Positions 221 to 44,267 of a stretch of 64,000 nucleotides of DNA are shown one piece after another. Positions within the stretch are counted from its first letter, which is position 1. Every line of letters begins with the position of its first letter. A program made the position numbers and the translations under genes. Below the pieces are notes generated by a model. The model worked only from the letters and a program-made list of their open reading frames with translations, had not been told where the DNA came from and made no database searches. The stretch is taken from positions 62,001 through 126,000 of the IMG/VR virus record IMGVR_UViG_3300044700_000691; one strand, 5' to 3'.

Positions 221-1888
221 TTAGTTTAATCTTGTTTCATCTCTAAAGAAGATGTTAATTGCACAAAGTTTATCATCTGACATTCCAGATTCATAAACGT
301 TGCCAGTTTTATCCCTAAAACCGCCTCTAATAATTGCAAACTCATTTGGCTTAATAATAATATCATTAAATGAATCTAGTCCATCCAGTGGCGCATTTAC
401 CATATTTGGATTGTTAATTGCAGATGCCTCATTAGCTTCACCGATAATTTGAATACTAACTGAATCGACTCCGCTAATTCCCTCTACTAGTTTAATTAAA
501 TCACTTTTTGGAATACGATCTTTACGCGTGTTATTAACAAAATAGGATCCTATTTGTTCAACGATTTGACCTTTAATTGAATCTTTATCGTAATCCGCAA
601 ATGTAACCAAGCTAATATTTAAAGCATATTTCTTTGGAATTGGATCTAGTAGTCTAACTGTGGTTGATATAAGTTCGGTTCCAGATTTTTTAATATATTT
701 TAATAATTCTGTTTTTTGGAATGCAGTTAACTTAAATCGATCCTCGATTAGGTTAAAGTAGTCAACTCCACGTGCAAATATTTTAGTAATATCTGGTACT
801 AAGAATATATTAATTACCCGATTGTCATCAGGATCTAGCGTAACCCTAACCGAAGAAAACATTTGTAGTTTTCTCATTAGGACTTCATAATTATCAACAT
901 TAACCAGTGCAAAGTTTTTACTTGCCTTTGGCGCAAGCAGTCTAGTTAAAGCTAGTGACTCTGGATCTGTTCCAAAATTTGGCGAATTTACACAGCTTAC
1001 TGTTACCATATCAGTAAGAGTTACCTCTTCACCTATTGTGTTTAGTGCAGTATCAGTAAATGTAAAAATTAATTCAGATAAGGCATCTGTAACAATATTA
1101 CCAACTGCACCTTCTGTTATTAAATATTCAACAATAATTTCAGCTCCAGTTGGTGGAATTTTTCCAAATGAACCATTTCCAAAATAGATATCAAGACCAT
1201 TAGTAATACCAGTTTTGCAAACATAACAGTTACCATTTCTTGGAATATCTAGCATTGATTGGTAATTTTCCCAGCGCTCTCCATTAACATAGACGTTAAC
1301 TAGGAACTGGTCAATTAAAAAGTTATTTGGATATCCTAACTGTAAACTTTGAAAAGCTTCTCCAGTACTACCAAAGGTTTGTTGCTGAAGTCTACCCTGT
1401 CTAATTGTAAAGTTTAAGCCAGTCGTACCTTTCATATCTAATCGAGCTTCGTCTCCTGGCATTTCCACTACATAATTTAATCCATTGTTTTCACAATTAA
1501 GATTCATGTATTTTGTAAAAATTAATCTATTGCCTGGAATTTTAGTAAAGTCTACTTTTAAACTTGGCTTAACCTGAATCGTGCCGACTGCTGATAGAGC
1601 TCGGCTGGGATTGTGTCCAGATAGTGAAGCTAGTGAATAGACTGAAGATGGGCGGTTTGCCTCATAAATATTAAGTTCAGTAATCGAGTCTTCTATATAG
1701 AATAAAATCAGCTCAGTTAAGTTATGTAAAACTATCAAAAGCTGACCAAACGGGGAAGCTAACGTAAAAATGTCGCCGCTCGTTTTAAATTTCTGTTGTA
1801 GAAACTGCACAGACTCCCTGTATAGTTCGGTAGCATTTGTGCTTAGCCCTTTAAAAAGCTTGTATGTTGGTGAAAGTGTTTCAGCCAT
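221..1888 (-). CDS. Baseplate wedge protein, T4 gp6-like
   Basis: Motifs typical of gp6-type wedge proteins: ANRPSSVYSLASLSGHNP, VYVNGERW, DIYFGNGSFGKIP..GAEIIVEYLITEGAVGN, GTDPESL..TRLLAP. Confidence 0.85.
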   Translation of the reverse strand: MAETLSPTYKLFKGLSTNATELYRESVQFLQQKFKTSGDIFTLASPFGQLLIVLHNLTELILFYIEDSITELNIYEANRPSSVYSLASLSGHNPSRALSAVGTIQVKPSLKVDFTKIPGNRLIFTKYMNLNCENNGLNYVVEMPGDEARLDMKGTTGLNFTIRQGRLQQQTFGSTGEAFQSLQLGYPNNFLIDQFLVNVYVNGERWENYQSMLDIPRNGNCYVCKTGITNGLDIYFGNGSFGKIPPTGAEIIVEYLITEGAVGNIVTDALSELIFTFTDTALNTIGEEVTLTDMVTVSCVNSPNFGTDPESLALTRLLAPKASKNFALVNVDNYEVLMRKLQMFSSVRVTLDPDDNRVINIFLVPDITKIFARGVDYFNLIEDRFKLTAFQKTELLKYIKKSGTELISTTVRLLDPIPKKYALNISLVTFADYDKDSIKGQIVEQIGSYFVNNTRKDRIPKSDLIKLVEGISGVDSVSIQIIGEANEASAINNPNMVNAPLDGLDSFNDIIIKPNEFAIIRGGFRDKTGNVYESGMSDDKLCAINIFFRDETRLN

Positions 1889-1915: not shown

Positions 1916-1996
1916 TAGGGATAATTGAACTTTGGAAAAGATTTTACGTCGCTCAAGACTAAATAGATAATTCTTTAGTATTATACTAAGAAATAT

Positions 1997-2463
1997 GGGG
2001 CTGTTTTGGCGTTTGACAAGCGGTCGTAGTTCTTTGAATGCAGGCGGAGTTAGTATTGGAAACTCTTTAATAACCTATACAAACAATAACTGACAATAAG
2101 TCAACTTGGACTTTCGAAGACGCAATGTCTTTCGTAGGTGCAGATTTAGCAGTAGCTGCCTAATCTCTCCCGTATCACTCATGGGACTTTAAGAAGAAGT
2201 GAAAGCCAAATCCAGGTGGCTCCCTTAATAGTCAAGGCTGACCTTGAGCATCTGATCGTGGACGATCTATACAGGGGGCGAAAGAGTTGGAGTAACAGGT
2301 CGGAGCTCTACTAAATAACTTCGAGACCGGGTTGTTTGAAAGTTTGGTTCCTACATACATCAAACTTTATATTTTGTCCGTTTAGAAAAATGGACTAAGC
2401 CTGTAAATGAATTCATTGAAGTAGCCGGATTGGACACGGGTTCGACTCCCGTCAGCTCCACCA
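1997..2463 (+). ncRNA. ssrA: Phage-encoded tmRNA (SsrA); tag ORF 2092-2163, (A)DNKSTWTFEDAMSFVGADLAVAA*
   Basis: 5' GGGGCTG pairs with 3' CAGCTCC-A-CCA, giving the G3.U alanine determinant. T-arm ACGGG-TTCGACT-CCCGT. Resume context AATAACT|GAC. Tag ends LAVAA-TAA. Pseudoknot-like pairings follow the tag. Confidence 0.95.
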
Positions 2464-2496: not shown

Positions 2497-3246
2497 ATGA
2501 AGAATACAAATACTCAGGATATATTCCTACGTAATCTTACAATCTCCCTACTGGATCTATTAAATAGACAGTTGGAGATTGAATTATGGCGTGACGATCG
2601 CCCAGAAATTCATACAATTCCTTTTTACTTTAATCAAGGAACCGACGAAGGCTTTATGCAAGATTTCTTTATAGGAATTCCTTCTACCTGTAAAATTTCA
2701 CAAATGGCAGAAGGTAACTATGATCCTATTCCAAGAGGAATTATTACCTTAAGTTCATTTAATGTAAAATCTTCAGATCTTGTTAATAAGTATGTTAGAG
2801 GAACCTTTCAGCGCGATGAATTTGATGAAAATGATGCAAAGAAAAGTAAAGCCTATTCAGCAAGACTCTATTCCCTGCCACTTAAAGTAAACTTTGATGC
2901 AAAGATTATTGTAGATAATCTTAATAAAACATTTAAGGCAACTGAAAAACTATTTGATCTTTTCTATAGTAATCGAGTAATGTATTTTCAATATAGAGGA
3001 ATCAGGATCCCTGCTCTATTTGTTTTTCCAGATCAGGCAACAAATGATAAAGCCTACAAATTTTCTTACACTGACAATAATAAAATAACTATCACATTTC
3101 AAATTGAAATTGAGACCTACTTTCCAAGCTTTGATAAAACTACGGAAATGTATAGAGGAAATGTTATCGACCAAATCTTAATGAAGACTGTTGATAATGA
3201 TTCTGGTCAATTAGATGGTAAAACTTGGATAGACGGCACAGAATGA
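2497..3246 (+). CDS. Tail terminator / sheath stabiliser, T4 gp15-like
   Basis: Pattern FLRNLTISLLDLLN...IPFYF...PRGIITLSSF...PLKVNFDAKI...ITFQIEIETYFP follows the gp15 layout and size. Confidence 0.65.
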   Translation: MKNTNTQDIFLRNLTISLLDLLNRQLEIELWRDDRPEIHTIPFYFNQGTDEGFMQDFFIGIPSTCKISQMAEGNYDPIPRGIITLSSFNVKSSDLVNKYVRGTFQRDEFDENDAKKSKAYSARLYSLPLKVNFDAKIIVDNLNKTFKATEKLFDLFYSNRVMYFQYRGIRIPALFVFPDQATNDKAYKFSYTDNNKITITFQIEIETYFPSFDKTTEMYRGNVIDQILMKTVDNDSGQLDGKTWIDGTE

Positions 3247-4755: not shown

Positions 4756-5205
4756 TTATGCTTCTACAAACTTAAAGAATGTAGGGTAGTTATTACTACT
4801 TTTTACATCATTAAGTGTTTCCAATTTAATTGGATGATACGACAATTCCTTTTCTTGACTTAATAAGCCATTGAATTCGGTGTTAAATTCAGCAAATTTA
4901 GGATTCATTTTAGAAACCTCTTTACCGTCTTTGTCCATTTCCTTGATAACCATTTGTAGAGAAACTCCACCTTGGTCGTCAGCTGTGCCGTATTTTTTGA
5001 TCAGTTCCTCACGTTGTGCATCTAAGGTTTTTACCTCGGCTAACACAATGTCATTTAATTGATTAATCCAGTATTTAGCCACAAGACCAATTTCTTCGTC
5101 TAGGATACCGGTTTTTATCTTCTCTCCAGTTTGCTGGTTGATCAAGCCGCTAAGTTCGCTTTGTAGAGAGTAGATTTCAAAAAGTTTTACTGTTAAGTTC
5201 TTCAT
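4756..5205 (-). CDS. Hypothetical helical protein (149 aa)
   Basis: Intact ORF with its own upstream motif and downstream terminator. Confidence 0.7.
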   Translation of the reverse strand: MKNLTVKLFEIYSLQSELSGLINQQTGEKIKTGILDEEIGLVAKYWINQLNDIVLAEVKTLDAQREELIKKYGTADDQGGVSLQMVIKEMDKDGKEVSKMNPKFAEFNTEFNGLLSQEKELSYHPIKLETLNDVKSSNNYPTFFKFVEA

Positions 5206-5692: not shown

Positions 5693-7024
5693 CTAAGCTA
5701 GTCCAAAACGGGTTTGGTACTTCTTAAAGTTTTGAGTAACTTCAGCTTGCGACAGGACTCGATTGTAAATTTTAGCAACTGGGATTTCTCCATTATATGG
5801 ACCAGTTGTAGCCCCATGCCTCTTTCCAAATATAATAACTGAATTAAAATTATAATTAAGGATTGGGTATGCGGTAGTGGTCAATATTAATTGGCCATTT
5901 CTATATAGCTTATAACTGTAATTAGAATATGTTGCAACTAGGTGCACAAACCCTGTAGTAGTTTCCTTTACCCCCGACCAAGCAGTTCTTTCAAATCCAG
6001 TTGACCCAAACCCCCAGCCTTGGCCAGTTTCATTGTATACAATTGTATCAAATGGCTCTCCACTTTCTCCCATTATTCCAATGACTCCTCCGGCTTGATG
6101 ATTTATATCATATACTCTAGTAACAGCTTCATACGTTTTATCTGTAATATTTGGTAAAAATACTCCAGTTTGACCATAGTCGTTTGTACCATCAAATATT
6201 ATTTGTGCATTTGCATCAAAAGAAACAGTTGATATATTAATTGTTGAATTTCCTGCCAAAGGTAAAAGACCCTGTGTTGCAGACCGAGTATAGGCTGAGC
6301 TATATTGAGTAGCATGTGGTTTTACTTCTAATTGAACGTCTGCTATTCTTAATTCGCCAGCGCCAACTGCATGTCCATAAAAATACATGGTTGGTCCACT
6401 ACCTAACTGACCATAGTCCTTGGCCATAAATGTGATAGATACCCTTTGCCAAGTATTAACCTCTGTATTATATCCATTTTGTAAGCCATCATGGAAATCA
6501 TTATAACCACGAGTGGGACTATAAGAATAGATCCCAACATGAGCGGCTCTGTCTAGATTCTCAACGTACTGTAACCAAGATATTGTGTAAAGTGTTCCAG
6601 CAATAATTCCTATACTATTTAGTGACGCTAAGCCTGTCCCAAAATATTTAGCTTGCCAAACGCCCGTTTCATTATACATTCTCACGACAGGCCGCTGTAT
6701 AATAGTATCAAATATCCAATAAGCATGTCTAGTATTATACCACTCAACTCCTGAGTTTGCAGTATTGATACCAGTGTTTAGGTAATATGAAATATCTCCG
6801 CCGTTTGTATTAAAAACTCGAATTGCGCCTGGATGATTGGCTGCTATATTACCTGTGCCAGATTCTGGCATATATGATTCGTATGACCCATCTAATCTGG
6901 CATTTTGATGATAAATGTGATTGGTAGTAGGCTCCCCTAAGTAAGAGTTAACTGTATCTATTGTGTCGTATGCAAAAATTAACCCGCTTGAAACTGATGC
7001 ACCAAATCCGTATTGTATTGCCAT
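5693..7024 (-). CDS. LamG/concanavalin A-like virion protein with an inserted carbohydrate-binding-like domain
   Basis: Start MAIQYG at 7024, directly after the upstream stop. Motifs GLIFAYD, FDGTNDY, HLVATY..LYRNG, GEIPVAKIYNRVLSQAEVTQNF. Confidence 0.8.
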   Translation of the reverse strand: MAIQYGFGASVSSGLIFAYDTIDTVNSYLGEPTTNHIYHQNARLDGSYESYMPESGTGNIAANHPGAIRVFNTNGGDISYYLNTGINTANSGVEWYNTRHAYWIFDTIIQRPVVRMYNETGVWQAKYFGTGLASLNSIGIIAGTLYTISWLQYVENLDRAAHVGIYSYSPTRGYNDFHDGLQNGYNTEVNTWQRVSITFMAKDYGQLGSGPTMYFYGHAVGAGELRIADVQLEVKPHATQYSSAYTRSATQGLLPLAGNSTINISTVSFDANAQIIFDGTNDYGQTGVFLPNITDKTYEAVTRVYDINHQAGGVIGIMGESGEPFDTIVYNETGQGWGFGSTGFERTAWSGVKETTTGFVHLVATYSNYSYKLYRNGQLILTTTAYPILNYNFNSVIIFGKRHGATTGPYNGEIPVAKIYNRVLSQAEVTQNFKKYQTRFGLA

Positions 7025-7025
7025 A

Positions 7026-7739
7026 TTATAATCCGTATCTTGTTTTCTGTACGTTAAAGTTTTGAAGGACTTCTTGCGCTGATAGAGCTCGGTTGTACAC
7101 TCTAAATTGAGAGAAAGATCCTTTATATGGAGCTCCGCCATTCGCATAAGTGCCTAACCCGTAACCATTACTACCCCTACCCATACCGCCATTGTGAAAA
7201 TTAAAATTAGAGGTTCCATCTACCCGAATTCCATTTACATAGGTATTTAAACTTCCTATGCTACTATTAGGTACGGTATCGGTAAATACCCAAGTAAAAA
7301 TGTTCCAAGTATTATTAACCCAACTTCCCATGCCGCCTGGATAATCTCCGCTTGGACTACCGGGAAAGTAGTGAGAGCCCATGCAGCTTGTATGACAATA
7401 AAACATAGGGCCGTAATTTCCATTAGTTCCCATTGATATAATTCCATATGATCCGCCTTGATCTAATCCATTATGATAAAACATTAGCTCTAAGGTAAAG
7501 CTAGAAAGTCCTCCAGTTAATGTAGAGTTTCCAATCCAATCGTTAGTGCCGTCTAGGGTTAATGCTTTAACACCGTTGATTGTTGTATAACTAATTCCAT
7601 TATACAAGGTACCATGATGGTTGCCGCCAGCTAAATCATACCAAGTAGAGCCGCTGCCCGGATATGAGTTAGTATCAGCTGCATCTAGCGCCAATACTAA
7701 GCCGGTTGTAATAATTTTAGGTGAGAAGTGTAAAGCCAT
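7026..7739 (-). CDS. LamG/concanavalin A-like virion protein (short form)
   Basis: GLVLALDAADTNSYPGSGSTWYDL...LDGTNDW...YVNG...FRVYNRALSAQEVLQNF. Confidence 0.85.
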   Translation of the reverse strand: MALHFSPKIITTGLVLALDAADTNSYPGSGSTWYDLAGGNHHGTLYNGISYTTINGVKALTLDGTNDWIGNSTLTGGLSSFTLELMFYHNGLDQGGSYGIISMGTNGNYGPMFYCHTSCMGSHYFPGSPSGDYPGGMGSWVNNTWNIFTWVFTDTVPNSSIGSLNTYVNGIRVDGTSNFNFHNGGMGRGSNGYGLGTYANGGAPYKGSFSQFRVYNRALSAQEVLQNFNVQKTRYGL

Positions 7740-7745
7740 ATAAGA

Positions 7746-7752
7746 TATTTAT
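7746..7752 (-). promoter_or_regulatory. Late promoter candidate ATAAATA
   Basis: Intergenic, 6 nt before the ATG at 7739. Confidence 0.6.
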
Positions 7753-7765
7753 TTGGCTTAAAAAA

Positions 7766-8113
7766 TTATTGAGGCCAATTAGCTTCAATTGGAGAAGACC
7801 ACTCCTCAGTTGCAAGAAGAGCAAGGATTTCCGAATGAGTTAATTCTGGATAAGAGTCACTCCAAACCGAAGGCCTGCCATAGGTTCCGGCTATGGTCGT
7901 AAAAGTCGATTCTTCCATAGATTCAGGATTTAACATTGTTGTGACAATATCTTCTTCGACTACTTGAATTTCATATTTAATAAATGTTTTGGTTCCATCT
8001 AGTGAATATCGTAGGGACTCTTGATTAAATTCTAAAACCTGATCGAAATTGATAGATTCGACTAGGGCAGATGGAATTATTAACCATCTTCTGTTTTCAA
8101 ATGGGGTTTGCAT
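7766..8113 (-). CDS. Small hypothetical protein within the LamG cluster
   Basis: Intact ORF (INFDQVLE...SLRYSLDGTKTFIKY...THSEILALLATEEW) with a TAATG overlap with the upstream gene. Confidence 0.7.
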   Translation of the reverse strand: MQTPFENRRWLIIPSALVESINFDQVLEFNQESLRYSLDGTKTFIKYEIQVVEEDIVTTMLNPESMEESTFTTIAGTYGRPSVWSDSYPELTHSEILALLATEEWSSPIEANWPQ

Positions 8114-9681
8114 TATAAATTAAATCTTTTTTTGTATGCTTTAAAGTTTTGAGATACCTCAGCCGCAGTTAGGGCTCTATTATAAAATTTAACAACATCG
8201 ATTAAACCTGCCCAATTATGCCCACCACCTGAGTATCTGGAACCTATACCACGATGGGTTGTACCAGAAGATAGTGTATTAACTGAACCAGTTGAAACTG
8301 ATGCTTCTAGGTTTCCATTTAGGTAAACGCTAACGGTTGAGCCATTCCAACTATATGCTACATGGTAATATCTATTTGCTGTAATGGTAGAGGTTGTTCT
8401 GGCTCCAGTAGTATGGCCGCCGTTTCCATCAAACCAATTTGATCCATTGTGTAAGTCTATTCCAAAAAAAGTTTGACCTCCATAATTGTATAGAGCAATC
8501 CAAGTACTTGCTTCTTGAATATAAAGCTGATTATAAGAACTTGGTAAAGAAGTCGGCTTACAAATAAATTCATAGGTGGCTCGAGTAAAGCCAGATTGTA
8601 AATTTGTTGATAGTGGTATATAGTCATTTGTTCCGTCAAAGGTAAGGGCACCCGCTGAATCAAATGAAACGTTTGCTACATCAAGTATGGCAGATCCAGC
8701 AACAGTAAGCAAAGATTGGGTTGAGCTTCTAGTTCCTGCAACAAATGGCGTTGGATGAGTATTTTTTTCAACCTGAATATTTGCTAAATCGTATTTGTCG
8801 AGTGCGCCTGGCCAAAAATATGAAATTACATTTTCATTAATTGGGGTAAATTGAAAAGACTGTCGTGTCCACACTCCAAGCGGGCCATGTGTATAACCGT
8901 GACCCCAACTCGTTGGGCTAACACTGCCATAATTATAATTTTGCATCGAACCATATGCATTAGCGGTTTGCTTGTTTAGTGCCCTTGTCCAAAATGAATA
9001 GGTATGAACCTGTCCAGGAACAACGACTGCATCTGGTCCATATGACATACCGTCTGCGCTCTCTGGACGGTGTGCATGTAATCGCATGCAATCAGTTTTT
9101 TGAGAAGGATAAAGATCAAATCCTCCAACTATAATTTCTTTTACTAATCCTGAGTTGGGTAGATGTGGAGGACCCCACCACTTAGTCGGAAACCCGCTAG
9201 AATTTACTGAAACCCGCTGATCTAACCAAAATGAATCATGTACTTTGTGTCCTCTTGTTGCAGGATTAATATAACCTTGATCCCCGCCTTGTGAGCCATT
9301 ATATTCATGTAAGCTAAATTGAGTGTTTGAAATTTTCTTAGCAAAGTAATTAACGCCAGCTGTTACCCCACCCCCTGTTGTTTGAGGAGTAATAACATCA
9401 AACGAATAAATTCCATGGGAACCAGCCGTTGTAATAATATTACCAGAAACGCTTGATATAGCTGGAATATCCCAATGTACTGCACAGCCATTATTTCCAC
9501 AATACTTATTTGTATTATAGGTGGCCCAACCGTTACCAAAAGTTGGATAACTGTTTACTTGAGGAGAGGGTATAGTATTTACAGCAGGCTCGCCCTTATA
9601 ACTATTAAAAAAATCTGCAACATCAAACGCAAATATTAATCCAGTTGAAATTTGTCCATTATATCCTTTACGACTTGGCAT
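8113..9681 (-). CDS. LamG/concanavalin A-like virion protein with inserted domains
   Basis: GLIFAFD..SYKGEP; QVEKNTHPTPFVAGTRS; FDGTNDY; YHVAYSWNGSTVSVYLNG; KFYNRALTAAEVSQNF. Confidence 0.85.
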   Translation of the reverse strand: MPSRKGYNGQISTGLIFAFDVADFFNSYKGEPAVNTIPSPQVNSYPTFGNGWATYNTNKYCGNNGCAVHWDIPAISSVSGNIITTAGSHGIYSFDVITPQTTGGGVTAGVNYFAKKISNTQFSLHEYNGSQGGDQGYINPATRGHKVHDSFWLDQRVSVNSSGFPTKWWGPPHLPNSGLVKEIIVGGFDLYPSQKTDCMRLHAHRPESADGMSYGPDAVVVPGQVHTYSFWTRALNKQTANAYGSMQNYNYGSVSPTSWGHGYTHGPLGVWTRQSFQFTPINENVISYFWPGALDKYDLANIQVEKNTHPTPFVAGTRSSTQSLLTVAGSAILDVANVSFDSAGALTFDGTNDYIPLSTNLQSGFTRATYEFICKPTSLPSSYNQLYIQEASTWIALYNYGGQTFFGIDLHNGSNWFDGNGGHTTGARTTSTITANRYYHVAYSWNGSTVSVYLNGNLEASVSTGSVNTLSSGTTHRGIGSRYSGGGHNWAGLIDVVKFYNRALTAAEVSQNFKAYKKRFNL

Positions 9682-9694
9682 ATCTTAAATTATT

Positions 9695-10915
9695 TTAACA
9701 GAGGTAGCATCCTCTATTTTCATATCTGATTCGGGTTCTGTTATAAATTTCTAATATCTCAGGTTGAGCTAGGACTCGATTATATGCCAAAGCCATTGGA
9801 ATTTCTCCAAGATATTTAGAGTGGTATTCGCCTCCTATCATTGGCTCAGATCCTAAGTAGGTTCCGCCATAAAATCCGGTATTTACACTGGCAACTTGCG
9901 AGCCGTTTAAATATAGTTTAAGTATACCATCGGTCGATCGTGTACAGGCTAGCATATTCCAACCAGTTGGCGTGCCGCCTCCACCTAGAAGATATTCACT
10001 AGTTCCATTATTGTTTGCAACCCAAGCCGCAATTCCACCATGATAATAACTCATTAACTTAAGGCCAGCTCTATAATCAGGCGATGTGCAAATTAAAGTT
10101 CTATGTGGAGCACCCGTATCGCCATACCACTCAAACCATGCAACTAGAGTTTGATTTTGTGATAAATTTGCGGCAGAAATACCGCTTACCGTTAACCAAT
10201 TATTTGTGCCGTCTAAATAGATTGTGCCATCGCTAAGATAGCCGGCTCTAGTTAAATCAATTTGACCTGTGCCAGTTACATCAAGTAAACCGCCGGTGGT
10301 GCTTCTTGATCCAAGTACAAGCGGCGTTGAAAATCCTTTTTGTTCAAGCTGAAAACCAAAATATGCGAGTTTTTCGCCAACAAAGTCGCCAGTATAGCTG
10401 CTCATATAGAGGCCATTTTCATTAGCTTGGGTTGTTACAGTAGCCGACAGTCTAATCCACTTATGTCTGGGCCAATTTAGGTAATTAGTAGATCCATTAT
10501 AGGCAAATGAGCCAAGCGAATTATTATTAACTGCAGTTCTAACATAAGGCGCAGATGCAAGGGTTGTTCCAGTAAAATAAAAATAAATTGAAAAACTATA
10601 TATTGTACTTGGGCTTACTGGAACAATTGAACTGCCTATATGCTGACTCCCAACTGCAGTTACGGTTGAACTAAAAACTTTAAGACCAGATGTATCGACA
10701 TTTGCAATTACGGGTTTAGCAATTGATGTGTCATTATCATTAAATGTGGTTGATCCACTGTTAGTCCACCAATTTGAGTTGGAATTTAGTGAAGGATTTC
10801 CCGCATACGCTAAATTTGTAGTAGGCGCCCCTAAATATGACGTATTTTTGTCATTTGTATCAAACGCAAAAATTAAGCCGCTTTCGTTATAATCTAATCC
10901 GCTTTTAATTGACAT
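9695..10915 (-). CDS. LamG/concanavalin A-like virion protein with an inserted CBM-like domain
   Basis: GLIFAFD..SYLGAPTTN; QLEQKGFSTPLVLGSRS; LDGTNNW; LYLNG; AYNRVLAQPEI. Confidence 0.85.
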   Translation of the reverse strand: MSIKSGLDYNESGLIFAFDTNDKNTSYLGAPTTNLAYAGNPSLNSNSNWWTNSGSTTFNDNDTSIAKPVIANVDTSGLKVFSSTVTAVGSQHIGSSIVPVSPSTIYSFSIYFYFTGTTLASAPYVRTAVNNNSLGSFAYNGSTNYLNWPRHKWIRLSATVTTQANENGLYMSSYTGDFVGEKLAYFGFQLEQKGFSTPLVLGSRSTTGGLLDVTGTGQIDLTRAGYLSDGTIYLDGTNNWLTVSGISAANLSQNQTLVAWFEWYGDTGAPHRTLICTSPDYRAGLKLMSYYHGGIAAWVANNNGTSEYLLGGGGTPTGWNMLACTRSTDGILKLYLNGSQVASVNTGFYGGTYLGSEPMIGGEYHSKYLGEIPMALAYNRVLAQPEILEIYNRTRIRYENRGCYLC

Positions 10916-13286: not shown

Positions 13287-16200
13287 TTATTCGCCTCTTA
13301 ATTTTTTAACCTCTAATTTAAGATCTTCTATTTGTGCCTGTTGCTCTTTAATAGCCTCAATTAAGAGTGCAGTCATGTTACCATAAGAAACATTATACAT
13401 TCCAGCGTTATCTTGATTTACAACTTCTGGAACAACTTCTAGCGTTTCTTGTGCAATAACTCCAATCTTAGTTCGAGTATCATCAGAATCAGTTCGGTTA
13501 TAAGAAACTCCACGTAGTGCTAAGGTTTTTGCTAGAGCATTTTCAATTGTATGTATATTGGTTTTAACTCTGGCATCTGAGTATGCTGTTACATCTCCAG
13601 CCATTGTAAGATTACCAGACATATCCATTTGCAATCTATTAGTAGATGCTGACCAACCACCAATGCGCATTACATTATCTGAGTCTAAACCAAAGTTTAC
13701 AGCATAATATCCCCCTCTATGAAAAGACATTATTGCACCACCACCATTATTTGAATATGCTTGTAAAGGAGCTGAATCTGTACTTGTATTTCTATTAGAT
13801 ACAAAATAATTTTGTCCTGTCCAACTATGACCATTACCTAATGAATTAGATATGCTGTTAGTATTACCTACTGTTTGAGATGCAATATTGTATGCTGTAA
13901 TAAATTCATAAAATGTACCATATGATGTAGATGTAGAAGCTTGAACACTTATTGCCATTCTTGGTGTACCATTTCTTAATGTATGTAAAGCACACATTTG
14001 AAGTACATCACCACCAGAATAACCATTAATCCAAAGTGTATCTGACCATACAGACCAAGCTCCTGTCATAGCAGCTTTTAATCCAATACCATTATTAAAA
14101 TATACTTGAGGATTAGTTTGTTGACCTCCAGCATAAGCTGTAGCTAAATATGTTGAATAACCACCAATATTTGTTTGGTCTCCAGTATTTGTACCAGAAG
14201 AAGAACCTGAATGGGAACCGCTAAAGTTTGATGAGGCAAAGGTTCCAGCTATCTGCATATTACCAGATGTAGCGTTTATTGCAGCTATTGGAGCATAAGA
14301 TATTCTACCCCAAGTAAATCCTCTACCTGCATCCCCATCATTCATTTGTGTTTTGATAGAATAATCATTAACCGGTCCATACTGATACAATGAAGATGAA
14401 CCCATACTAATTTTATAAGAATCCGATGACCAAAGCTTTAAACCATTACCTTCGCCTGGTGTCACATTATAGAAGGAGTTCTGATTACTTGCGTTTGGCG
14501 CGGAACCTGCGCTATTTGCATATCTTACACCAAGATCAGAAGGTTCAATCCAACCACTTCCTGAATATGCTCCATTATTATAAACGTATCTAGAGTAATC
14601 AACATAATTTCGACCTTCTCCTCTTGAAATAGCTACACGGGAACTAGCGTCAAACAGAGCCCCGGCATATAAATTATTAGCAGCTCTAACGTGTGAATCT
14701 CCATTGCCGACTGAAAATAATTCAGTTGCCATAGTAGAATCATCATAGAATCTAGTTCCACCATATCCAGTATTTGCTCCGATCTTAATTCCAGTGTGAT
14801 ATCCTATATGTAGATCTGGGTAAGGGTGACTCCAGCCTCCTCCACCTTGATAAATTGCATATGAGTGATTACTTGTGTTACCAGAATCTCCACCGACTCC
14901 AGTAAATCTTAGAACACGCAGAGTTCGATCTTCGTTATCTCTAAAATATGAAAAATTATTAATTTCAGTCTCAGTATAGTATCTGTCATCATGTGTATGT
15001 GAAGAAGCGGCCCATCCTCCGTAATTTCCTAAGTCATTTGAGAATTGAGAAAGAGCAGTTGGTCTACCTGTAACGCCGGTCCATGCAACATTGGTTGCAG
15101 TTGCAGCGTTTCCTGAAATATTTGTTTGATCACCAGTGTTTGTACCGCTTAAATTAGCTGCAAACCAGTTACCACTATTATCAGCATAAGCTCCCCAACT
15201 GTTAGATGAAGTTAAGAAACCGATTCTTCCACTATTACAGTGTATTCTTCTTGTAGTTTCATCTGTATCAGTCATGTAGATATCTGATGATGTACTATTA
15301 CCCACGGTTAGCGATCCATAAACTTGAACTCCTCCAGTATCTACTCTAACTCTCCAGCTATCTGTACTATCTAATAGTCCAAACCCTGCAGCATCTCCAT
15401 ACACTGATCCTTTAAGAGTACTTTCATGGTTAAGTCTAAATTGTAAGTGCACAACTGATCCGCCATTACCTGTAATACCCCATATAGAGCCTCCTCTTGA
15501 GTAAAAGTGATTTCCATTTGCCTGATTATAGAGACCAGTATTGTTTGAATTATTTCGGAACCAGCTGTTATTGTATAAGTCAGTAAAGGTTGGAGATGAT
15601 GAAGTTAGGAGAGCTTGGTTTAGATAACTAGATAACCAGGTTCCTCTGGTTCCAAAGTAAATATCGCCATTTACTAAGAAACTGCCATTTGTTCGTATAC
15701 CTGCATTAGGCGCATCTCCATAGAAATAGTAGGTTTCATTACCTACATAAATATTTGAGTCAAATCTAGCAGAACCTCCGCTATAAACCATTTTATTTCC
15801 GCGTACTCTTAGATAGGTACCGTCAGTCATAAACCAGCCGCCGCCCCAGCCAAAGGATAGGTCTTCATCTTTAAGGTAAGTTGAGGTACCTCGACCAAAC
15901 ACAATACCATCGTTATTGCCTAATAATTGAATTGAGCCATTTACATAAAGTCGGTTATTGGTTGGAACTCCAGTTGCACCAGAGTTATCAGAGGCAGTAT
16001 AAGAAAAATCAGTTGTTCCAAATCCAACCCGGCCGTCTTGGCCTACATAGATTGCATTTGTTCCAAACTTACCAATTTGTACAACATTGTTTGCAAATAC
16101 TTCAAGTACAGGTAAACCTGCAAGGGTATTTACGCTATATAGAGAATCTGAAAGATCATCAACTACTGTAAATAGTCGACCGTTAATTCCATTTACAGCA

Positions 16201-19200
16201 AAAGCTTCAGCTCCTTGGCTTGGGCTATTAATCGTTAAGGCACCGGTCATAGTGTCTCCGCTTACATTAACATATAAATTATCTGCAGTTGCTTGTGATA
16301 ATCCGCTTGAAGACAAAGTTACAGAGTTTCCGCCTGAAATACTTAGGGTATTTCCACTAAGGCTTAAGGTTTGACCATCAGTATTTGTGTCTGTATCAAT
16401 ATCATTAAATGCAGCAGTTAAGGTTGAACCATCACCTTGAGTTAAGGTTAAGGTTTTTGTACCAGTGCCGCTAAATGAAATTGCAGTAGGTCTCTTATCA
16501 TATGCAGTATTCCAGTTTGTTGAATTTCCTCCTGTTGCTGTGATAACTCCTACCGTCCAGATACCATAACCAATAGCTGTTTGGGTACTGCCATTAGCCA
16601 TAAATAGTGCTTGGTGTCCTAATCCAGATTTAGATTGTCCTCCTACATTTGTATGTGTCCATGCAATACCATAAAGAGATCCGGGAGAAGTACCATCGGC
16701 AGATACTTTGTAAGCATCTCCCATTGCAAATACACCCTGGTATCGATCGGAAGCATACAGGCCAACTATACCATTACCATAGTTATCGTCTATATAAAAA
16801 TTACCATTAGCTCGAGTTGCTCTTGCTGCAGTACCCGATACATTAATACTCCAAGTACCACTATTATAAACATAGGCAGTACCGTCTGAGTGTTTTAGTC
16901 TACCTCCATATATGTAAACGGTTCCGCCGCCATTACCAAAATACATATCACCACTTGAGTAATGATTAAAATACATTTGATAAACATTGCCTGCTCCACC
17001 TCTTGTGTCTATATGTAAATTACCGTTAGAAGTTCTAATACGAGCGTATGTTGTATCAGTCGACCAACCGCCAAGATGTAAAGCTGCCGCAGCACTATAT
17101 GAGCTAGCTCCGTATAGAATTAATGCAGTAGCATCACCATTTACAATTGTATTTGTAATATTTGTATAAACTCCATTTGTAACAGAACCGGCATTACCTG
17201 AAATATTAGTAACACTAGTTAAATATCCACTGTTATTAGTAAACTGAGAAATATTCATTGAACTTAGAGCGCCGGCTGTAGCTACAGTTTGTGAACCAAT
17301 GTTTGCTGAAGTTATTACAGCACTACCGTTCGCATACAATGTTCCGCCAATAGCAGCATAAGTATTTCCAGAAGTATCTATTTTAAATCTTTCTGTACCC
17401 CATCCATCTGAAGTTGAGTTATTATTTCTATAACCCATGTTTTGAGTAACACGAAAGTTATCATCATTAGAACAATATCCTACATTCCATCTAGTATCAT
17501 TACCTCCATATGAAAATTGAATAGATGGTCTATCAGAATCGGCAGTATTTATTCTATATCTAGCTACAATACCCCAAGAGTGATTACCTCTATCAGATTC
17601 AAAACTGTATGGAATAAAGTCTCCAGTTGCTGATTGTAAAGTTATCCATTTTCCAGATTGTCCATGGCTCGCTGTACCAACGTTACTTCTATGAAACTCA
17701 GAACCATCACTCCAATATTCATGACCCGCGCCTCCAGAAGGGGCTGCCGCTATATAGGTGTGACCATATATCCAGTTATCAGCGCCCGCTGTTGAAATAC
17801 CATTAGGAAAGAATGCAGAATCGGCAGTGTTCCAAGGATTTCCAGGACTTATGTAACCGCCTTTTGCATAGATAACATCTGTGCTAGGATTTACATAAAC
17901 GTGGGTTGTCCCATAAACATTATTACCAGAACCCCATAATAATTGATATGTTGAGTTTGAATTATTATCATAATTTATAGTTACTTGTGAAGATGTTCCT
18001 GCAATATTTGCATAGGCAACTCGTACACCAGCTGGAGTACCTGGAGAAACTTTAAGTTCCCAGTAACTACCACCATCATAGTTCATGTACATATAGTATG
18101 GAGCAGCTCCGCCGTAAACATAACTTCCATCACTAGCATATAATCGTGTAGAGTTTGTTGCGTAAGTAACAGATTGAGAACCAATATTACCGGTTGTGAT
18201 TAATCCTAAGTTTGATATAAAGTTTGCTGGAGTTTGATAACGCATATAGTCATCATCAGAACAATATATTTTATTTATACCACTTGAAAATGCTCCAGAA
18301 GTTGTGTTAATCCATCCCGCTTGAATATATCCATTGGCATCTGTTCTTACAATTTTGTTTACTTCATTGTTTCTACCACCGTGTACTGCTAACCCACCTG
18401 CTGTTGTAGCATTGCTTACAGACTGAGAGCCAATATTACCGGTTGTGATTGCGTCAGTAATGCCATAACCTGAAATTGTAGTTGGTTTACTGGTTAATGA
18501 AGCAAATGTATGCGAATGTGATATTGCTGCATATCTACCATCTAACAAAGATTGTTTCTTAGTTCGGAGACCATCTATACGTGATGAATTGACTGCAGCT
18601 AATCCTAATGGAGCAGGCGCAGGGACATCATATTGATTTGTACCTGACCAAGCATCATCATAAGATAATGTACTTGAACTATATAAAATGTCAGGTGAAC
18701 CGCTTTGATAAAAACCATTAATTGGTTGATCAGAAAATAGGTGATAAACTGCGCCACCTCCACGTAACATAAAGACATACCCCATTGAGTGGCTATATAT
18801 GAACATATCGGCGCATACGTTTGTATAAGATTCGTTAAATACTCGTAAACGATCTGCATATTCAGCACCGCCCCATCCACCAAAATTACCTTCCCAATCT
18901 AAGAGAAGACCTCCATGGTGAACACCTGTTCCAATTGGATCCCAAGGAGCAGGTTCACCATATCCGCGCTTAATAATAATTCTACGCCAAACATCCTGAT
19001 CTCCTCCCCAAAACTGAACAGCATAAAATCTGTCAGGGTCTCCATCAACTGTAATGTCAACAGAATATGGTAAGGTTGTAACGCCTAACATATTAGATAG
19101 GCCGTTAACTTTAGTCCCAGTTAATTGAGATCCACCTAGATATACACTGCTAAATGAAGGGGCACTGTCTGTTCTAACATTTTGATTTAGATAAGTAGAT

Positions 19201-20009: not shown

Positions 20010-20014
20010 ATTAG

Positions 20015-23000
20015 TTATCTATTTTCAAGATTTTCAATTCTCTCGGTTAATTTTTTAATTATTTCATGCTGTTCTTGAATTGTCTTAATCAAGATTGGCG
20101 CGATACGAGTATAGTTAATACCATCAACTTGACCTTCACTATCATATTTAACTAATTCAGGATAGATTTCAGCAACCTCTTCCGCAATTAAACCAATTTC
20201 AGTTTCGCCAGTTCCACCAATTTTAACATAGTGAACTGGTCTTAGTTGTAAGACTTTATCTAGAGCTGGAGTTAGGGACTCAACTTGAGTTTTATATCTA
20301 ATAGATGATAATTCTATTAATCGATTTGCGATTGTTAGGGTTCCAGTATTACTTACTTCAAGTAAACGGTCTCCATCAATTGCACCTTGCCATATAACGA
20401 AATCATCCATTGTATTTGCACCACCGCCGACTCCACCGTCTGTATTTAGCACAAAATGGTGACCTCCTCTAGATTGGTATTCTAGCCAATAATTAGAGCC
20501 TGCTGCAAAACCTTCGCTTGGATAAGCTGCTGCTCGAATTATATTATAAAATCCGCCAGATCCGTCTCTAAATGCAAGTTCGCCGATGATATTTAAGTTT
20601 CCACTAAGGGTACCTCCACTTAGTGATAAGTAGTAGCTATCTGTAACCTGACTCCTAAAGTGACCAGGCGTAGATTTTCTTAAATAGTTATCACTTGTAT
20701 TTTGAGTCCAAATTTGACCAATAGTTGGGTTTTCTGAGTTACCAGCAGAAGCATTAAAATATGATCCTAAGACATAGTTTGAATAGATATTTCCGCTAGA
20801 GTCTCTTCGTACAATTGTATTTACGTTTGCTGCAGTATCTGAAGTATATCCATCCAATAAATCTGCGTCTAAACCAGAACCAGCTCCATCATTTCCTGCA
20901 TGCCAAGGCGTATATCCAAGAGCAGTAGTAACGTTTCCGCTTGTTATACTTGTTAAATATCCACTGTTATTAGTAAACTGTGAAATATTCATTGAGGTTA
21001 AAGCTCCGGCAGTGGTTGCAGTAGCAGCATTGCCGCTAATATTAGTTTGATCTCCTGTATTTGTACCAGAAGATGACCCACTAAAGTTAGTTGCACTTAT
21101 GGTGCCAGTAACAGAAAGGTTACCCCCACTAGTTAAAGATAATCTTCTAGCAGCGTTCCATTGAATAACAAAATCTGCACCAGCCGCCCCACCAGATCTA
21201 GTCATACCAAGTCTCCAGTGGTCGTTGTACCATTGATATTCATGACCAGAGACTAGGTCATTTGTGGTGTACGAAGATGGAATGTATACAGCAACCTCTC
21301 TTCCTTCACTACCGGTTATTGTTATTGGAGTTGACGTGGTTGCTCCTCTACCTGTTACACTCGCTAGAGTATCGGTTTCTGTATATCCAGTTATGTAACC
21401 TTGAGAAGTTACCCATGATTGAGTTGCTAATAGGTTTCCAGCTGCATACGGTACATATTTAAAATATGCAGTATTTGCAGTAGTTATTTCAAGCGCAACT
21501 ACAGTTGGATCATAGATATCACCATATCCAAGTTTAAAGCTATTTGTGTTAGCATTATTAGTCATTCCCATCGACCACATTGGTGCTCCTGTGTAATCCC
21601 AAGCAGTTCCTTGATATGTGCCCATGGCGGTCATAAACATTAGTGTTGCCTGATTCCCTGTTCCTTGTCGGCTAATGAATACTCTGGCAGTTCCTGTTTT
21701 AGCGCTAACATATAATTCTGGATTAGATCCAGCCAATTGAATTTGTGCTGGGTTAGCACTAATTGGAGAAATGTACAGATTTCCTGTCATTTCATCTCCA
21801 CCTATATTAACATATAGCCCGTCTGCTGTTGCTTGAGAAATTCCAGTTGATGCAAGCGTTACAGAGTTACCTCCTGAAATACTTAAGGTATTTCCAGAAA
21901 GACTAAGCGTTTGTGCATCAGTATTTGTATCAGTATCAATATCTGTCCAAGTTGCAGTTACTGTGCCTCCATCTCTTTGTGTAAGAGTTAGGGTTTTTGA
22001 AGTTGTTCCACTAACTGCAGCTGAAGTTATTGTATCATTATATGCAGAATTCCAATTCGCTGAAGTACCATGACTTGGCGTAGAAATTCCACTTGCATTA
22101 ATTACAATAGGCGCAGAAAAGGGTCCAATATTAACAGTATTATTAGCAAAGGCTTCGATTACAGGAAGACCTGCTACCGTATTTACTGAAAATAGAGAAT
22201 TTGAAAGATCATCACTTACTGTGAACAGTCTGCCATTAACTCCGTTTACTGCAAATAATTCCTGGCCGCTGGTTGAACCAGTAATTACTAAAGGCCCAGT
22301 CATTGTGTCGCCAGTTACATTAACATATAGCGGATTAGCTGCTGCTTGTGTTAACCAGCCGCCATAGTTTCCTAAGTCATTAGAGAATTGAGAAAGAGCA
22401 GTAGGTCTGCCTGTTACTCCAGTCCATGCTACATTCGTAGCGGTAGCAGCGTTTCCAGAAATACCAATTGCCCAAGTGCCGTTTTCCCAAACGTAATTGT
22501 AACCTGAACCAGTTTTTAAATTACCATCAGTTGCTAAATAAAATTTAAGAGCTCCAGATTGAGTAAACTTAATTTCTTCGTTTGAGTCATCTTGTGTACC
22601 AATTTCAAGGTAAGATCCTCCAGCCTGGTTGCCGGTTGATATAAATTTAATAAATGCGGCATCTGTATTTAATCCCCAAGTAAGTCCTAATCCAGATGTT
22701 GCACCAAAGGCAAGATTACCAGTCATTGTATCACCACTTTTAGAAACTTTGTTTCCTATTGATGTGGTAATTGTGGTAGCAAAATTAGCATCATTACCTA
22801 ATGCGGTAGCTAATTCGTTAAGTGTGTCTAGTGTACTAGGAGCCGATGCAACTAAGTTAGAAACAGCTGTGTTTACATAGGTTTGAGTTGCATATCCAGA
22901 AAGAGCGGAGGTTGTAATATAAGCTGGGCCATTGGTTAATTGGTTTAGGTTAGTTAAGTTACCAGCTGTCCATACTTGTGAGTTATCCCAATATAGCCTT

Positions 23001-44245: not shown

Positions 44246-44267
44246 GTGTTTCTACTTAATTTTTATA

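What the first reader, a model, noticed from the sequence alone, without database searches (positions are those of the whole stretch)
1997..2463. Phage tmRNA that is oversized and encodes an unusually long tag peptide
Seen: a 467-nt tmRNA whose tag ORF has 23 codons, (A)DNKSTWTFEDAMSFVGADLAVAA. Known: bacterial tags are typically about 10 residues (e.g. E. coli ANDENYALAA), and the terminal LAA/AA is the ClpX signal. Inference: the extra amphipathic WTFEDAMSFV segment may recruit a different adaptor or protease, or let the phage re-route rescued polypeptides. The phage copy could also back up a host tmRNA attacked by defence nucleases. No smpB is present in the window, so host SmpB is presumably used.
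Basis: partly seen in the sequence, partly recalled or inferred. Interest (0 to 1): 0.6.

Follow-up and report, generated by a model that had tools for sequence, protein, structure and literature searches.

The report
Phage tmRNA with conserved long tag
A 217-kb freshwater phage carries its own ribosome-rescue RNA (tmRNA) whose 23-codon tag is real and belongs to a family of 23-26-codon tags shared by at least 150 uncultured phage contigs, so these phages appear to set the fate of unfinished proteins with a signal more than twice the usual length.

Summary
Window 1997-2463 (+) is a complete tmRNA (Rfam RF00023, 104.6 bits, E 8e-40). It lies inside the structural-gene block of a 216,815-bp phage contig that has no smpB.

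ARAGORN reports "Tag not identified" here, and its guessed ORF lies in the pseudoknot region. The covariance alignment, the U-5/A-4 context and homology all put the resume codon at GAC 2092. That gives DNKSTWTFEDAMSFVGADLAVAA, 23 codons, stop 2161-2163.

The main new result is that the long tag is not a peculiarity of this phage. Two degenerate-pattern scans of IMG/VR returned 112 and at least 120 contigs. From these I extracted 152 complete tmRNAs (360-474 nt, median 384), all with 23-26-codon tags of one architecture: [A/D/G]x-E-x-S-[ST]-[FMW]-T-F-[ED]-D-x-M-x-F-[VI]-G-A-D-[YL]-A-[VIL]-A-A.

- Variation is concentrated at third codon positions, so the peptide is under selection.
- Only the window's subgroup is oversized (464-468 nt), because of an expanded pseudoknot domain.
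- Contigs from RNA libraries cover the gene.

The tag reads as an ordinary ClpX-type C-terminus plus a conserved acidic-aromatic extension whose partner is unknown. Long tags also occur in other phage tmRNAs (Bxz1, LR756504).

The host clade could not be identified or scanned, so mimicry of a host tag is not excluded.

The parts
1997..2463 (+). Complete one-piece tmRNA gene (ssrA), 467 nt
   Evidence: RF00023 104.6 bits, E 8.3e-40, full model; ARAGORN
1997..2003 (+). Acceptor stem, 5' strand GGGGCTG. It pairs with 2453-2459 (CAGCTCC). G1999.T2457 is the G3.U70 alanine identity pair.
   Evidence: Pairs. Across relatives, positions 4-7 change in a compensatory way (GGGCCGG/CCGGTCC, GGGGTCG/CGACTCC, GGGGCAT/ATGCTCC) while G1-G3 and the G.U stay fixed.
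2046..2080 (+). Pseudoknot 1: stems GGAGTT/AACTCT and GTATTGG/CCTATAC
   Evidence: Rfam alignment; pair 50-70 alternates G.U and G-C among relatives
2087..2091 (+). Frame-setting context TAACT just before the resume codon (U at -5, A at -4)
   Evidence: Read. The same U-5/A-4 is present in 142 of 152 family members. Role of E. coli U85/A86: PMC1168896, PMC2481249.
2092..2160 (+). Tag reading frame, 23 codons: DNKSTWTFEDAMSFVGADLAVAA (resume codon GAC)
   Evidence: Homologous tags called by ARAGORN in relatives. Coding-type substitution pattern.
2161..2163 (+). Stop codon TAA of the tag frame, in the 3' strand of helix 5
2142..2166 (+). Helix 5 (AGATT..AATCT with inner GCAG/CTGC), enclosing the end of the tag frame
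   Evidence: RNAalifold pairs 146-170 and 153-163; predicted only
2167..2394 (+). Pseudoknot domain (PK2-PK4 region), expanded. It holds most of the roughly 85 extra nucleotides compared with 380-384-nt relatives that carry the same tag type.
   Evidence: Alignment with L091, L028, L102 and L124. Compensatory changes within the subgroup, e.g. TCGGAG/CTTCGA to TCAGAG/CTCTGA in L004 and AAAGTTTG/CAAACTTT to CTGAT/ATCAG. The detailed fold was not solved.
2436..2452 (+). T arm (stem ACGGG/CCCGT, loop TTCGACT)
2460..2463 (+). Discriminator A plus encoded CCA. Several close relatives have ACTA or ACTC instead, so there CCA must be added after transcription.
1943..1971 (+). Weak sigma-70-like promoter match (TTTACG-17-GATAAT), 26 nt upstream of the mature 5' end
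   Evidence: Consensus match only: 4 sites found against 2.0 expected in shuffles.
221..1888 (-). Baseplate wedge gene, divergent neighbour of the tmRNA. The arrangement is conserved in all window-type contigs and in L028, L032 and L080, whose protein is only about 50% identical.
   Evidence: phrog_219 E 3e-29; synteny
2497..3246 (+). Downstream neighbour, 249 aa, no family match. Conserved next to the tmRNA in the window's subgroup.

Best explanation
This is a working, phage-encoded tmRNA.

The gene is transcribed from the phage genome. The RNA is trimmed like a tRNA and charged with alanine by the host AlaRS through its G3.U pair. Host SmpB and EF-Tu bring it into stalled ribosomes. Translation then resumes at GAC 2092, so the unfinished protein receives Ala plus 23 residues and the ribosome is released at UAA 2161.

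The tag has two parts. The last six or seven residues (A-D-L-A-V-A-A here, mostly A-D-Y-A-V-A-A in relatives) form an ordinary ssrA-type C-terminal degron for a ClpXP-like host protease. Before it lies a conserved acidic-aromatic segment (S-T-[FMW]-T-F-E-D-A-M-x-F-V-G) that is the hallmark of a large family of freshwater phage tmRNAs. It most likely gives a second contact for an adaptor or another AAA+ protease.

For the phage, which also carries its own tRNAs and a GroEL, the gain would be more ribosome-rescue capacity and faster clearance of truncated proteins during infection.

Shown: the gene, its frame, the family, selection on the peptide, absence of smpB, and contigs over the gene in RNA libraries.
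Inferred: charging, use of host SmpB, proteolysis, and the role of the extension.
For: Gene and frame:
- Full-length RF00023 match.
- G3.U kept while the rest of the acceptor stem covaries.
- Resume codon set by the CM alignment, U-5/A-4 and homology.

Family and selection:
- 112 contigs found with the core pattern.
- At least 120 contigs found with a pattern covering only G-A-D-Y-A-V-A-A-stop, and every one carries the same upstream core.
- 152 complete genes, all with tags of 23-26 codons.
- In the set not selected on the core, diversity at codon positions 1/2/3 is 0.19/0.10/0.39. S, T, F, M and D are invariant or nearly so, with variable third positions.
- Nucleotide identity of the tag (0.75) equals that of the tRNA-like 3' end (0.76) and exceeds that of the pseudoknot domain (0.63).

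Phage origin:
- The gene is flanked by baseplate and tail genes, 64 kb into a 217-kb contig.
- Synteny holds down to about 50% identity of the neighbouring protein.

Partners and expression:
- No SmpB, ClpP, Lon_C or SspB in the contig.
- In four metatranscriptome runs, contigs cover the gene. One is an exact 307-nt contig (2010-2293) with k-mer depth 760, against 14-21 for exact contigs in the flanks.
Against: - No experiment supports any step.
- The host is unknown, so host proteases and adaptors are assumed.
- The RNA evidence rests on assembled contigs. The tool warns that these cannot prove transcription or rank expression, and they give no RNA ends.
- No candidate partner for the extension was found in the contig or in conserved neighbours; the commonest neighbouring protein cluster is in only 30 of 152 loci.
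- A host clade with the same tag would make the extension a matter of mimicry rather than a phage-specific device. I could not scan bacterial genomes with the tag pattern.
- The contig is 84% complete, so a missing smpB or protease gene cannot be ruled out for this phage.
Confidence: 0.6

Rival explanations
1. Host mimicry. The host clade's own tmRNA encodes the same long tag. The phages copied the gene from their hosts, and the extension serves the host's normal adaptor and protease system, with nothing specific to phages.
For: In bacteria, tags are typically conserved within clades while the RNA body drifts, which is the pattern seen here. Phage tmRNAs tracking host lineages have been reported (PMC9004378).
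Against: - The phage's structural kin are huge phages of Bacteroidota (Lak, LR7565xx, Tenacibaculum pT24), and the SmpB of one relative sits nearest Bacteroidota clusters.
- The native Bacteroides tag is the 9-residue GETNYALAA.
- The motif strings occur in no paper of the library.
- Gene position is inherited within a phage lineage.
- Unrelated long acidic tags occur in other phage tmRNAs whose hosts have short tags. Bxz1 has 25 codons, against about 12 for mycobacteria (the host figure is from my own knowledge).
Confidence: 0.2
2. The extension is only a spacer or a by-product. What matters is the length of the mRNA-like region or its RNA structure, for example for fitting SmpB or the ribosome, and only the last residues act as a degron.
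For: Part of the tag frame can pair in predicted folds. Tag length is tightly kept at 23-26 codons.
Against: A spacer would not keep S, T, F, D, M, F and G invariant while third positions vary. The predicted pairing inside the frame has no covariation support (1 compensatory pair among 129).
Confidence: 0.1
3. Decoy or inhibitor. The RNA mainly titrates host SmpB or occupies stalled ribosomes to shut down host trans-translation, and tagging is secondary.
For: A TLD-only tmRNA in phage DS6A and inhibition by TLD fragments are discussed in PMC4131195. No smpB is present in this phage.
Against: The whole mRNA-like domain, the stop codon and the peptide sequence are conserved under coding-type selection, which a decoy would not need.
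Confidence: 0.05
4. The real tag is short, because translation resumes at a downstream in-frame codon such as GCA 2122 or GCA 2140.
For: ARAGORN picks short C-terminal pieces (ADLAVAA, AEYAVAA) in a few relatives.
Against: - The CM alignment places the resume codon at 2092.
- The spacing from PK1 and the U-5/A-4 context fit only this site.
- Residues upstream of those alternative starts are as conserved as the rest, with variable third positions.
- In some members, in-frame stops lie two to four codons upstream of the proposed start, which bounds the frame (L027, L031, L124).
Confidence: 0.03
5. Host gene caught on a viral contig: a prophage attachment site in ssrA, or an assembly chimera.
For: tmRNA genes are common prophage integration sites (PMC9004378).
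Against: - The gene is complete and lies 64 kb from one contig end and 152 kb from the other.
- It sits between baseplate and tail genes.
- The same junctions occur in 15 independent contigs from different samples.
- The locus is present in DNA and RNA runs from 14 studies.
Confidence: 0.02

Closest known systems
Bacterial one-piece tmRNA (SsrA, Rfam RF00023), e.g. E. coli
   Same: tRNA-like domain with G3.U, long helix 2, PK1 before the resume codon, U-5/A-4 context, G-initial resume codon, tag ending in A-V-A-A, stop codon in helix 5, and a downstream pseudoknot domain.
   Different: It is encoded by a phage with no smpB beside it. It is 467 nt against about 350-363 nt. It has 23 codons against 10. 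The resume codon is Asp (GAC), which is rare but known (PMC1168896). The pseudoknot domain is expanded.
Mycobacteriophage Bxz1 (cluster C) tmRNA
   Same: Phage-encoded, large (435 nt), with a long acidic-hydrophobic tag of 25 codons, ATDTDATVTDAEIEAFFAEEAAALV.
   Different: No sequence relation of the tag. Bxz1's tag ends in ALV rather than AVAA. Its gene lies in a tRNA array. Its host is an actinobacterium.
tmRNAs of huge phages (Al-Shayeb et al. 2020; LR756500, LR756502, LR756504)
   Same: These are the closest structural-gene kin of this phage. LR756504 has a 357-nt tmRNA with a 24-codon tag, DNVNSFEQSILNELFAPVEMAVAA. LR756502 holds a divergent tmRNA-like gene with a 29-codon frame ending GDLAVA and a 43-nt block 95% identical to the window's.
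   Different: Their tags lack the TFEDAM-FVGA core. LR756500 has an ordinary 10-codon tag, GNNAEMRMAA. The paper reports that tmRNAs are present but does not analyse their tags.
Mycoplasma tmRNA tag (27 residues, read by Lon)
   Same: A long tag in which the added length carries recognition by a protease other than ClpXP (PMC8403727, citing Gur and Sauer 2008 and Ge and Karzai 2009).
   Different: Mycoplasmas lack ClpXP and their tag lost the LAA end. Here the canonical YAVAA/LAVAA end is kept, so the extension comes on top of a ClpX-type signal rather than replacing it.
E. coli / Caulobacter SspB-assisted ssrA tags
   Same: Two-part logic: an upstream segment binds an adaptor and the C-terminal residues bind ClpX. 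The Caulobacter tag also ends in FAVAA (from my own knowledge).
   Different: No SspB gene in the phage. The upstream motif is unrelated in sequence and about twice as long. No adaptor has been identified.
Two-piece tmRNA of pelagiphage-like Melnitz (PMC9004378)
   Same: A phage-encoded tmRNA of an aquatic myovirus. That paper estimates that 2.3% of phage genomes carry one.
   Different: Melnitz's is circularly permuted and linked to a riboswitch. This one is one-piece, and no riboswitch was found (one search gave only the tmRNA in the window).

Membership tests
tmRNA (RF00023) | Sequence and structure match to the covariance model above the curated threshold, over the full length | tested here: met
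   104.6 bits against 47, E 8.3e-40, model positions 1-374
tmRNA (RF00023) | tRNA-like domain: 7-bp acceptor stem with G3.U70, T arm, discriminator A, and CCA | tested here: met
   Pairs 1-7 with 457-463 including G3.U; T stem-loop ACGGG-TTCGACT-CCCGT; ACCA encoded. The acceptor stem covaries across the family with G3.U fixed.
tmRNA (RF00023) | Pseudoknot 1 followed by a single-stranded leader with U-5/A-4 and a G-initial resume codon | tested here: met
tmRNA (RF00023) | Short reading frame without a start codon or Shine-Dalgarno sequence, ending in hydrophobic residues (..AA) and a stop codon in helix 5 | tested here: met
   DNKSTWTFEDAMSFVGADLAVAA*; helix 5 is predicted only
tmRNA (RF00023) | Partner protein SmpB available | tested here: not met
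   No PF01668 match in the 216,815-bp contig, so host SmpB is needed. This concerns the system rather than the RNA's family membership. One relative (G001) does encode SmpB.
tmRNA (RF00023) | Alanine charging and trans-translation activity | not testable with these tools
   Needs biochemistry or genetics
tmRNA (RF00023) | Expressed as a stable RNA | tested here: inconclusive
   Contigs from four metatranscriptome runs cover the gene, with far higher k-mer depth than exact flank contigs. The tool warns that contigs cannot prove transcription or show RNA ends.
Long-tag phage tmRNA family defined here (TFEDAM-FVGA core) | Tag of 23-26 codons with S-[ST]-[FMW]-T-[FW]-[ED]-[DS]-x-M-x-F-[VI]-G-A followed by [DE]-[YL]-A-[VIL]-A-A | tested here: met
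   The window's tag fits at every position
ClpX-type ssrA degron | Free C-terminus ending in a non-polar L/V-A-A | tested here: met
   ..LAVAA-stop. Recognition by ClpX itself was not tested.
SspB-dependent tag | An SspB adaptor present and an AANDENY-like upstream motif | tested here: not met
   No PF04386 match in the contig, and the motif is unrelated. A host adaptor cannot be checked because the host is unknown.

The most novel reading that the evidence does not exclude
Long acidic-aromatic tags are a phage adaptation that arose repeatedly: this family, Bxz1, LR756504, and the L127/L128 type. In this reading the conserved extension is a handle read by a dedicated partner, either a host factor used differently during infection or a phage protein not yet recognised. 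The phage, rather than the host, would then decide what happens to the products of ribosomes stalled during infection. That could mean faster recycling, escape from competition for ClpXP, or a fate other than degradation.
Probability: 0.3. Interest if true: 0.75.

Novelty: new variant of a known kind. Interest (0 to 1): 0.5.

Why it matters
tmRNA tags are the textbook example of a degradation signal, and their length and sequence report which proteases and adaptors read them.

Here at least 150 uncultured freshwater phage contigs, many over 100 kb, share a tag more than twice the usual length. Its extra segment is as conserved as the tRNA-like part of the RNA.

That makes a concrete question testable: do phages retune protein quality control during infection, and through which partner? 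It also gives a short, well-defined peptide to test as a degron or bait.

There is a practical point as well. ARAGORN mis-reports or fails to report the tag for this subgroup and misses related genes in huge phages, so surveys that rely on it under-describe phage tmRNAs.

Tried and rejected
- ARAGORN's printed tag (VKADLEHL...) was rejected. The program itself says 'Tag not identified', and the stretch behaves as structural RNA.
It returned only a Sedimenticolaceae MAG with an ordinary ANDDNYALAA tag and gave no lead to the host. As a result, bacterial genomes could not be scanned with the tag patterns.
- The window tmRNA found nothing in cultured or deposited phages by blastn except a 43-nt block in LR756502.
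- The one metagenome scan fished a tmRNA seen as a loose end in the RNA runs, in the hope that it was the host's. It turned out to be another phage-type tmRNA, inside a tRNA array, with a different 26-codon tag.
- A Bacteroidetes-type promoter motif (TAnnTTTG) is not enriched in the genome: 310 observed against 304 expected. It gives no host signal.
- The promoter and terminator scan around the gene gave nothing above chance.
- A search for a conserved protein neighbour as candidate partner found no cluster in more than 30 of 152 loci, and the top clusters have no informative Pfam match.
- ClpP, Lon_C, SspB and SmpB are absent from the contig.
- RNAalifold on the ten near-identical copies gave a nested fold with almost no covariation. 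I did not derive a full pseudoknot model of 2167-2394.
- Complex prediction was not used, because the tag is shorter than the 30 residues the tool needs.
- The literature search for the motif strings found nothing.

Full report
**1. What is there**

ARAGORN and Infernal against Rfam both find one tmRNA at window 1997-2463 on the + strand. It is 467 nt and matches RF00023 over the whole model (104.6 bits, threshold 47, E 8.3e-40). It is the only Rfam match at gathering score in the 64 kb.

The window is bases 62001-126000 of a 216,815-bp IMG/VR virus record, estimated 84% complete, with 35.9% G+C. The gene sits between a baseplate wedge gene (221-1888, minus strand, phrog_219, E 3e-29) and unannotated ORFs that are followed by tail-tube and virion-protein genes. 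It is therefore inside the phage's structural block. It is neither at a contig end nor at a prophage junction.

**2. The tag**

ARAGORN prints VKADLEHLIVDDLYRGRKSWSNRSELY but adds "Tag not identified". That stretch lies in the pseudoknot region, and between close relatives it changes in the loop of a hairpin, GATCG-TGGA-CGATC to GATCG-TAGT-CGATC.

The Rfam alignment instead puts the consensus resume codon on GAC 2092 with high posterior probability. Several things support this start:
- T2087 and A2088 lie at -5 and -4, the positions of E. coli U85/A86 that set the frame (PMC1168896, PMC2481249).
- The spacing from pseudoknot 1 is the same as in the consensus.
- Asp resume codons are known from other tmRNAs (PMC1168896).

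**3. Relatives**

A degenerate pattern for the first 12 codons found 11 IMG/VR contigs. Nine of them hold full-length tmRNAs about 97% identical to the window's. The only two changes in their tag frame are synonymous GCA to GCT.

A pattern for the core T-F-E-D-A-M-x-F-V-G-A then found 112 contigs. To avoid selecting on the core, I scanned with a pattern for G-A-D-Y-A-V-A-A-stop alone.

In all, 152 complete tmRNAs were extracted from 191 sources.
- All tags are 23-26 codons long (50, 81, 8 and 3 for the 142 members where the resume codon could be placed), with 50 distinct sequences.
- Resume codons are GAC, GCA, GGC, GCT, GTA and GAT, all G-initial.
- A G-initial codon with U-5/A-4 lies in frame with the core in 142 of 152.
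- In many of these relatives ARAGORN itself calls the long tag, for example AEELSSFTFEDAMAFVGADYAVAA, DVELSTMTFEDAMAFVGADYAVAA and DEKSTFTFEDAMSFVGADLAVAA. The last is plainly homologous to the window's.

**4. Selection on the peptide**

I used the set chosen only by the C-terminal pattern, 51 distinct sequences of the 16 codons before G-A. In the 12 core codons, diversity at codon positions 1, 2 and 3 is 0.19, 0.10 and 0.39. Ser, Thr, Phe (51 of 51), Met (50 of 51) and Asp (48 of 51) stay fixed while their third positions vary.

In the set chosen only by the core pattern, the C-terminal D-Y-A-V-A-A shows the same third-position pattern. In some members, in-frame stops lie two to four codons upstream of the resume codon.

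Between family members the 16 unselected codons are 75% identical at the nucleotide level. That compares with 76% for the last 75 nt (helix 2, T arm, acceptor), 69% for the 5' part and 63% for the pseudoknot domain.

The RNA scaffold is also under selection. Acceptor-stem positions 4-7 change in a compensatory way while G1-G2-G3.U stay fixed.

**5. Size**

The family ranges from 360 to 474 nt with a median of 384. Only the window's subgroup (12 genes, plus one other gene of 474 nt) exceeds 460 nt.

Alignment with 380-384-nt relatives that carry the same tag type shows where the extra nucleotides lie. About 85 of them fall between helix 5 and the last conserved block, that is in the PK2-PK4 domain, window 2167-2394. 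"Oversized" and "long tag" are therefore separate traits. The long tag is family-wide; the large size belongs to this lineage.

For scale, a 2005 survey gives about 350 nt as typical and 425 nt as the longest, with mRNA-like domains of 48-126 nt (PMC1168896).

**6. The phage, its host and its habitat**

The baseplate protein's best matches are uncultured huge phages: LR756500 at 35%, the Prevotella Lak phages, and LR756501-4. Next come Sphingomonas phage PAU and Tenacibaculum phage pT24. The phage also encodes a GroEL.

One 294-kb family member encodes SmpB, whose nearest Atlas clusters are phage and Bacteroidota. This points weakly to Bacteroidota hosts, and the native Bacteroides tag is the 9-residue GETNYALAA. 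The host was not established, however. A Bacteroidetes promoter motif is not enriched, and I could not scan bacterial genomes with the tag patterns.

The DNA occurs in freshwater and lake metagenomes from 14 studies.

The position of the tmRNA, 109 nt from the start of the baseplate gene, is kept in all window-type contigs. It is also kept in three contigs whose baseplate protein is only about 50% identical. In 62 of the 152 loci the gene lies within 1 kb of a tRNA gene instead.

**7. Partners**

The contig has no SmpB, ClpP, Lon_C or SspB. Three complete relatives of 237-271 kb also lack SmpB. No protein cluster neighbours the tmRNA in more than 30 of the 152 loci.

**8. Expression**

In four metatranscriptome runs, assembled contigs cover the gene. 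The clearest case is in run X15. An exact 307-nt contig at 2010-2293 has k-mer depth 760, while exact contigs at 1533-1942 and 2738-3151 have depths of 21 and 14.

The tool cautions that contigs cannot prove transcription, rank genes or show RNA ends. I therefore treat this as suggestive only.

**9. Other phage tmRNAs**

| Phage or locus | tmRNA length | Tag | Codons |
|---|---|---|---|
| Mycobacteriophage Bxz1 | 435 nt | ATDTDATVTDAEIEAFFAEEAAALV | 25 |
| Bacillus phage G | 309 nt | AKLNITNNELQVA | 13 |
| LR756504 | 357 nt | DNVNSFEQSILNELFAPVEMAVAA | 24 |
| LR756502 (tmRNA-like, missed by both programs) | not determined | ...GDLAVA frame | 29 |
| LR756500 | 413 nt | GNNAEMRMAA | 10 |
| L127/L128 (metagenome, in a tRNA array) | 383 nt | GESYIDADGNIVLNGQSVEFADLELA | 26 |

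Long, acidic, hydrophobic tags without basic residues thus recur in phage tmRNAs, though not in all of them. No paper in the library contains the motif strings of the present family. Earlier papers note that phage tmRNAs exist without analysing their tags (PMC7162821, PMC9004378, PMC4131195).

**10. Interpretation**

The gene is a functional phage tmRNA that depends on host SmpB and AlaRS. Its tag keeps a canonical ssrA-type end ([DE]-[YL]-A-[VL]-A-A). It adds a conserved extension of about 16 residues that must have a binding partner, given how it evolves. What that partner is remains open.

The main alternative is that an unidentified host clade has the same tag and the phages mimic it. The other rivals are all contradicted by the data above: a downstream resume codon, a spacer role, a decoy role, and host DNA on a viral contig.

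**11. Verdict**

This is a new variant of a known kind: a phage tmRNA family with a conserved extended tag. Interest is moderate, and higher if the extension proves to be a phage-specific handle.

Noticed in passing
L015 about 1216-1596 (+) = LR756502.1 about 231980-232360: A tmRNA-like gene in a 642-kb huge phage that ARAGORN and cmscan both miss. It has a GGGGGTG...CACCTCCAC acceptor with G3.U, U-5/A-4 plus a GAC resume context, and a 29-codon frame DNVSEVGTREDIVSALQNNMISVGDLAVA. It shares a 43-nt block 95% identical to the window's tmRNA. The T arm appears to be replaced by a plain long hairpin.
   Followed up: partly
L127 6324-6706 (+); L128 4051-4433 (-): Another phage-type tmRNA (383 nt) inside a tRNA array (Leu-taa, tmRNA, Ser-tga, Met-cat). 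It matches the window's PK1 stretch (about 2038-2081) closely in RNA-run contigs but encodes an unrelated 26-codon tag, GESYIDADGNIVLNGQSVEFADLELA, that does not end in AA.
   Followed up: partly
L209 1495-1938 (-) (IMG/VR contig of 294,034 bp, handle G001): One member of the long-tag family encodes its own SmpB (146.5 bits), while three complete relatives do not. Its nearest Atlas clusters are phage and Bacteroidota.
   Followed up: partly
window 59702-61294 (+): Phage-encoded GroEL chaperonin (phrog_5725, E 1e-148), about 47-49% identical to the GroELs of Vibrio, Bacteroides and Flavobacterium phages.
   Followed up: partly
window 4756-5205 (-): Small ORF (149 aa, phrog_1401, unknown function) covered by exact metatranscriptome contigs with much higher k-mer depth (286, 133, 45, 48) than its neighbours. 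It may be a very highly expressed phage gene.
   Followed up: no
window 5693-10915 (-): Four consecutive ORFs (484, 237, 522 and 406 aa) share a C-terminal domain (phrog_24074, 8510, 17347), so they look like a paralogous set of virion or fibre proteins. The first two overlap by 122 nt.
   Followed up: no
window 13287-25897 (-) and 38123-47942 (-): Very large ORFs (2240, 1960, 2040 and 1224 aa) in the structural block. Not annotated here.
   Followed up: no
G000:C1:201767-216566 (outside the window): Six tRNA genes (Ser-tga, Leu-tag, Arg-tct, Pro-tgg, Leu-taa, Met-cat) cluster at the far end of the contig, away from the tmRNA.
   Followed up: no
L219 1272-1844 (-) = LR756501.1 about 718159-718731: A strong group I intron match (RF00028, 96 bits) directly abuts a weak tmRNA match (21 bits) in the 735-kb phage. 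This may be an intron-interrupted or degenerate tmRNA gene.
   Followed up: no
window 2461-2463 compared with L005, L006, L008, L010, L011, L013: The window's copy encodes the 3' CCA, whereas very close relatives have ACTA or ACTC, so CCA encoding flips within a 97%-identical group.
   Followed up: no
window 2083/2208 (RNA runs X15, X16): Contigs join 2083 to 2208 and skip 124 nt (tag, helix 5, PK2). This most likely reflects a related tmRNA with a different middle part rather than a processed form. The letters between the two sides are not known.
   Followed up: no
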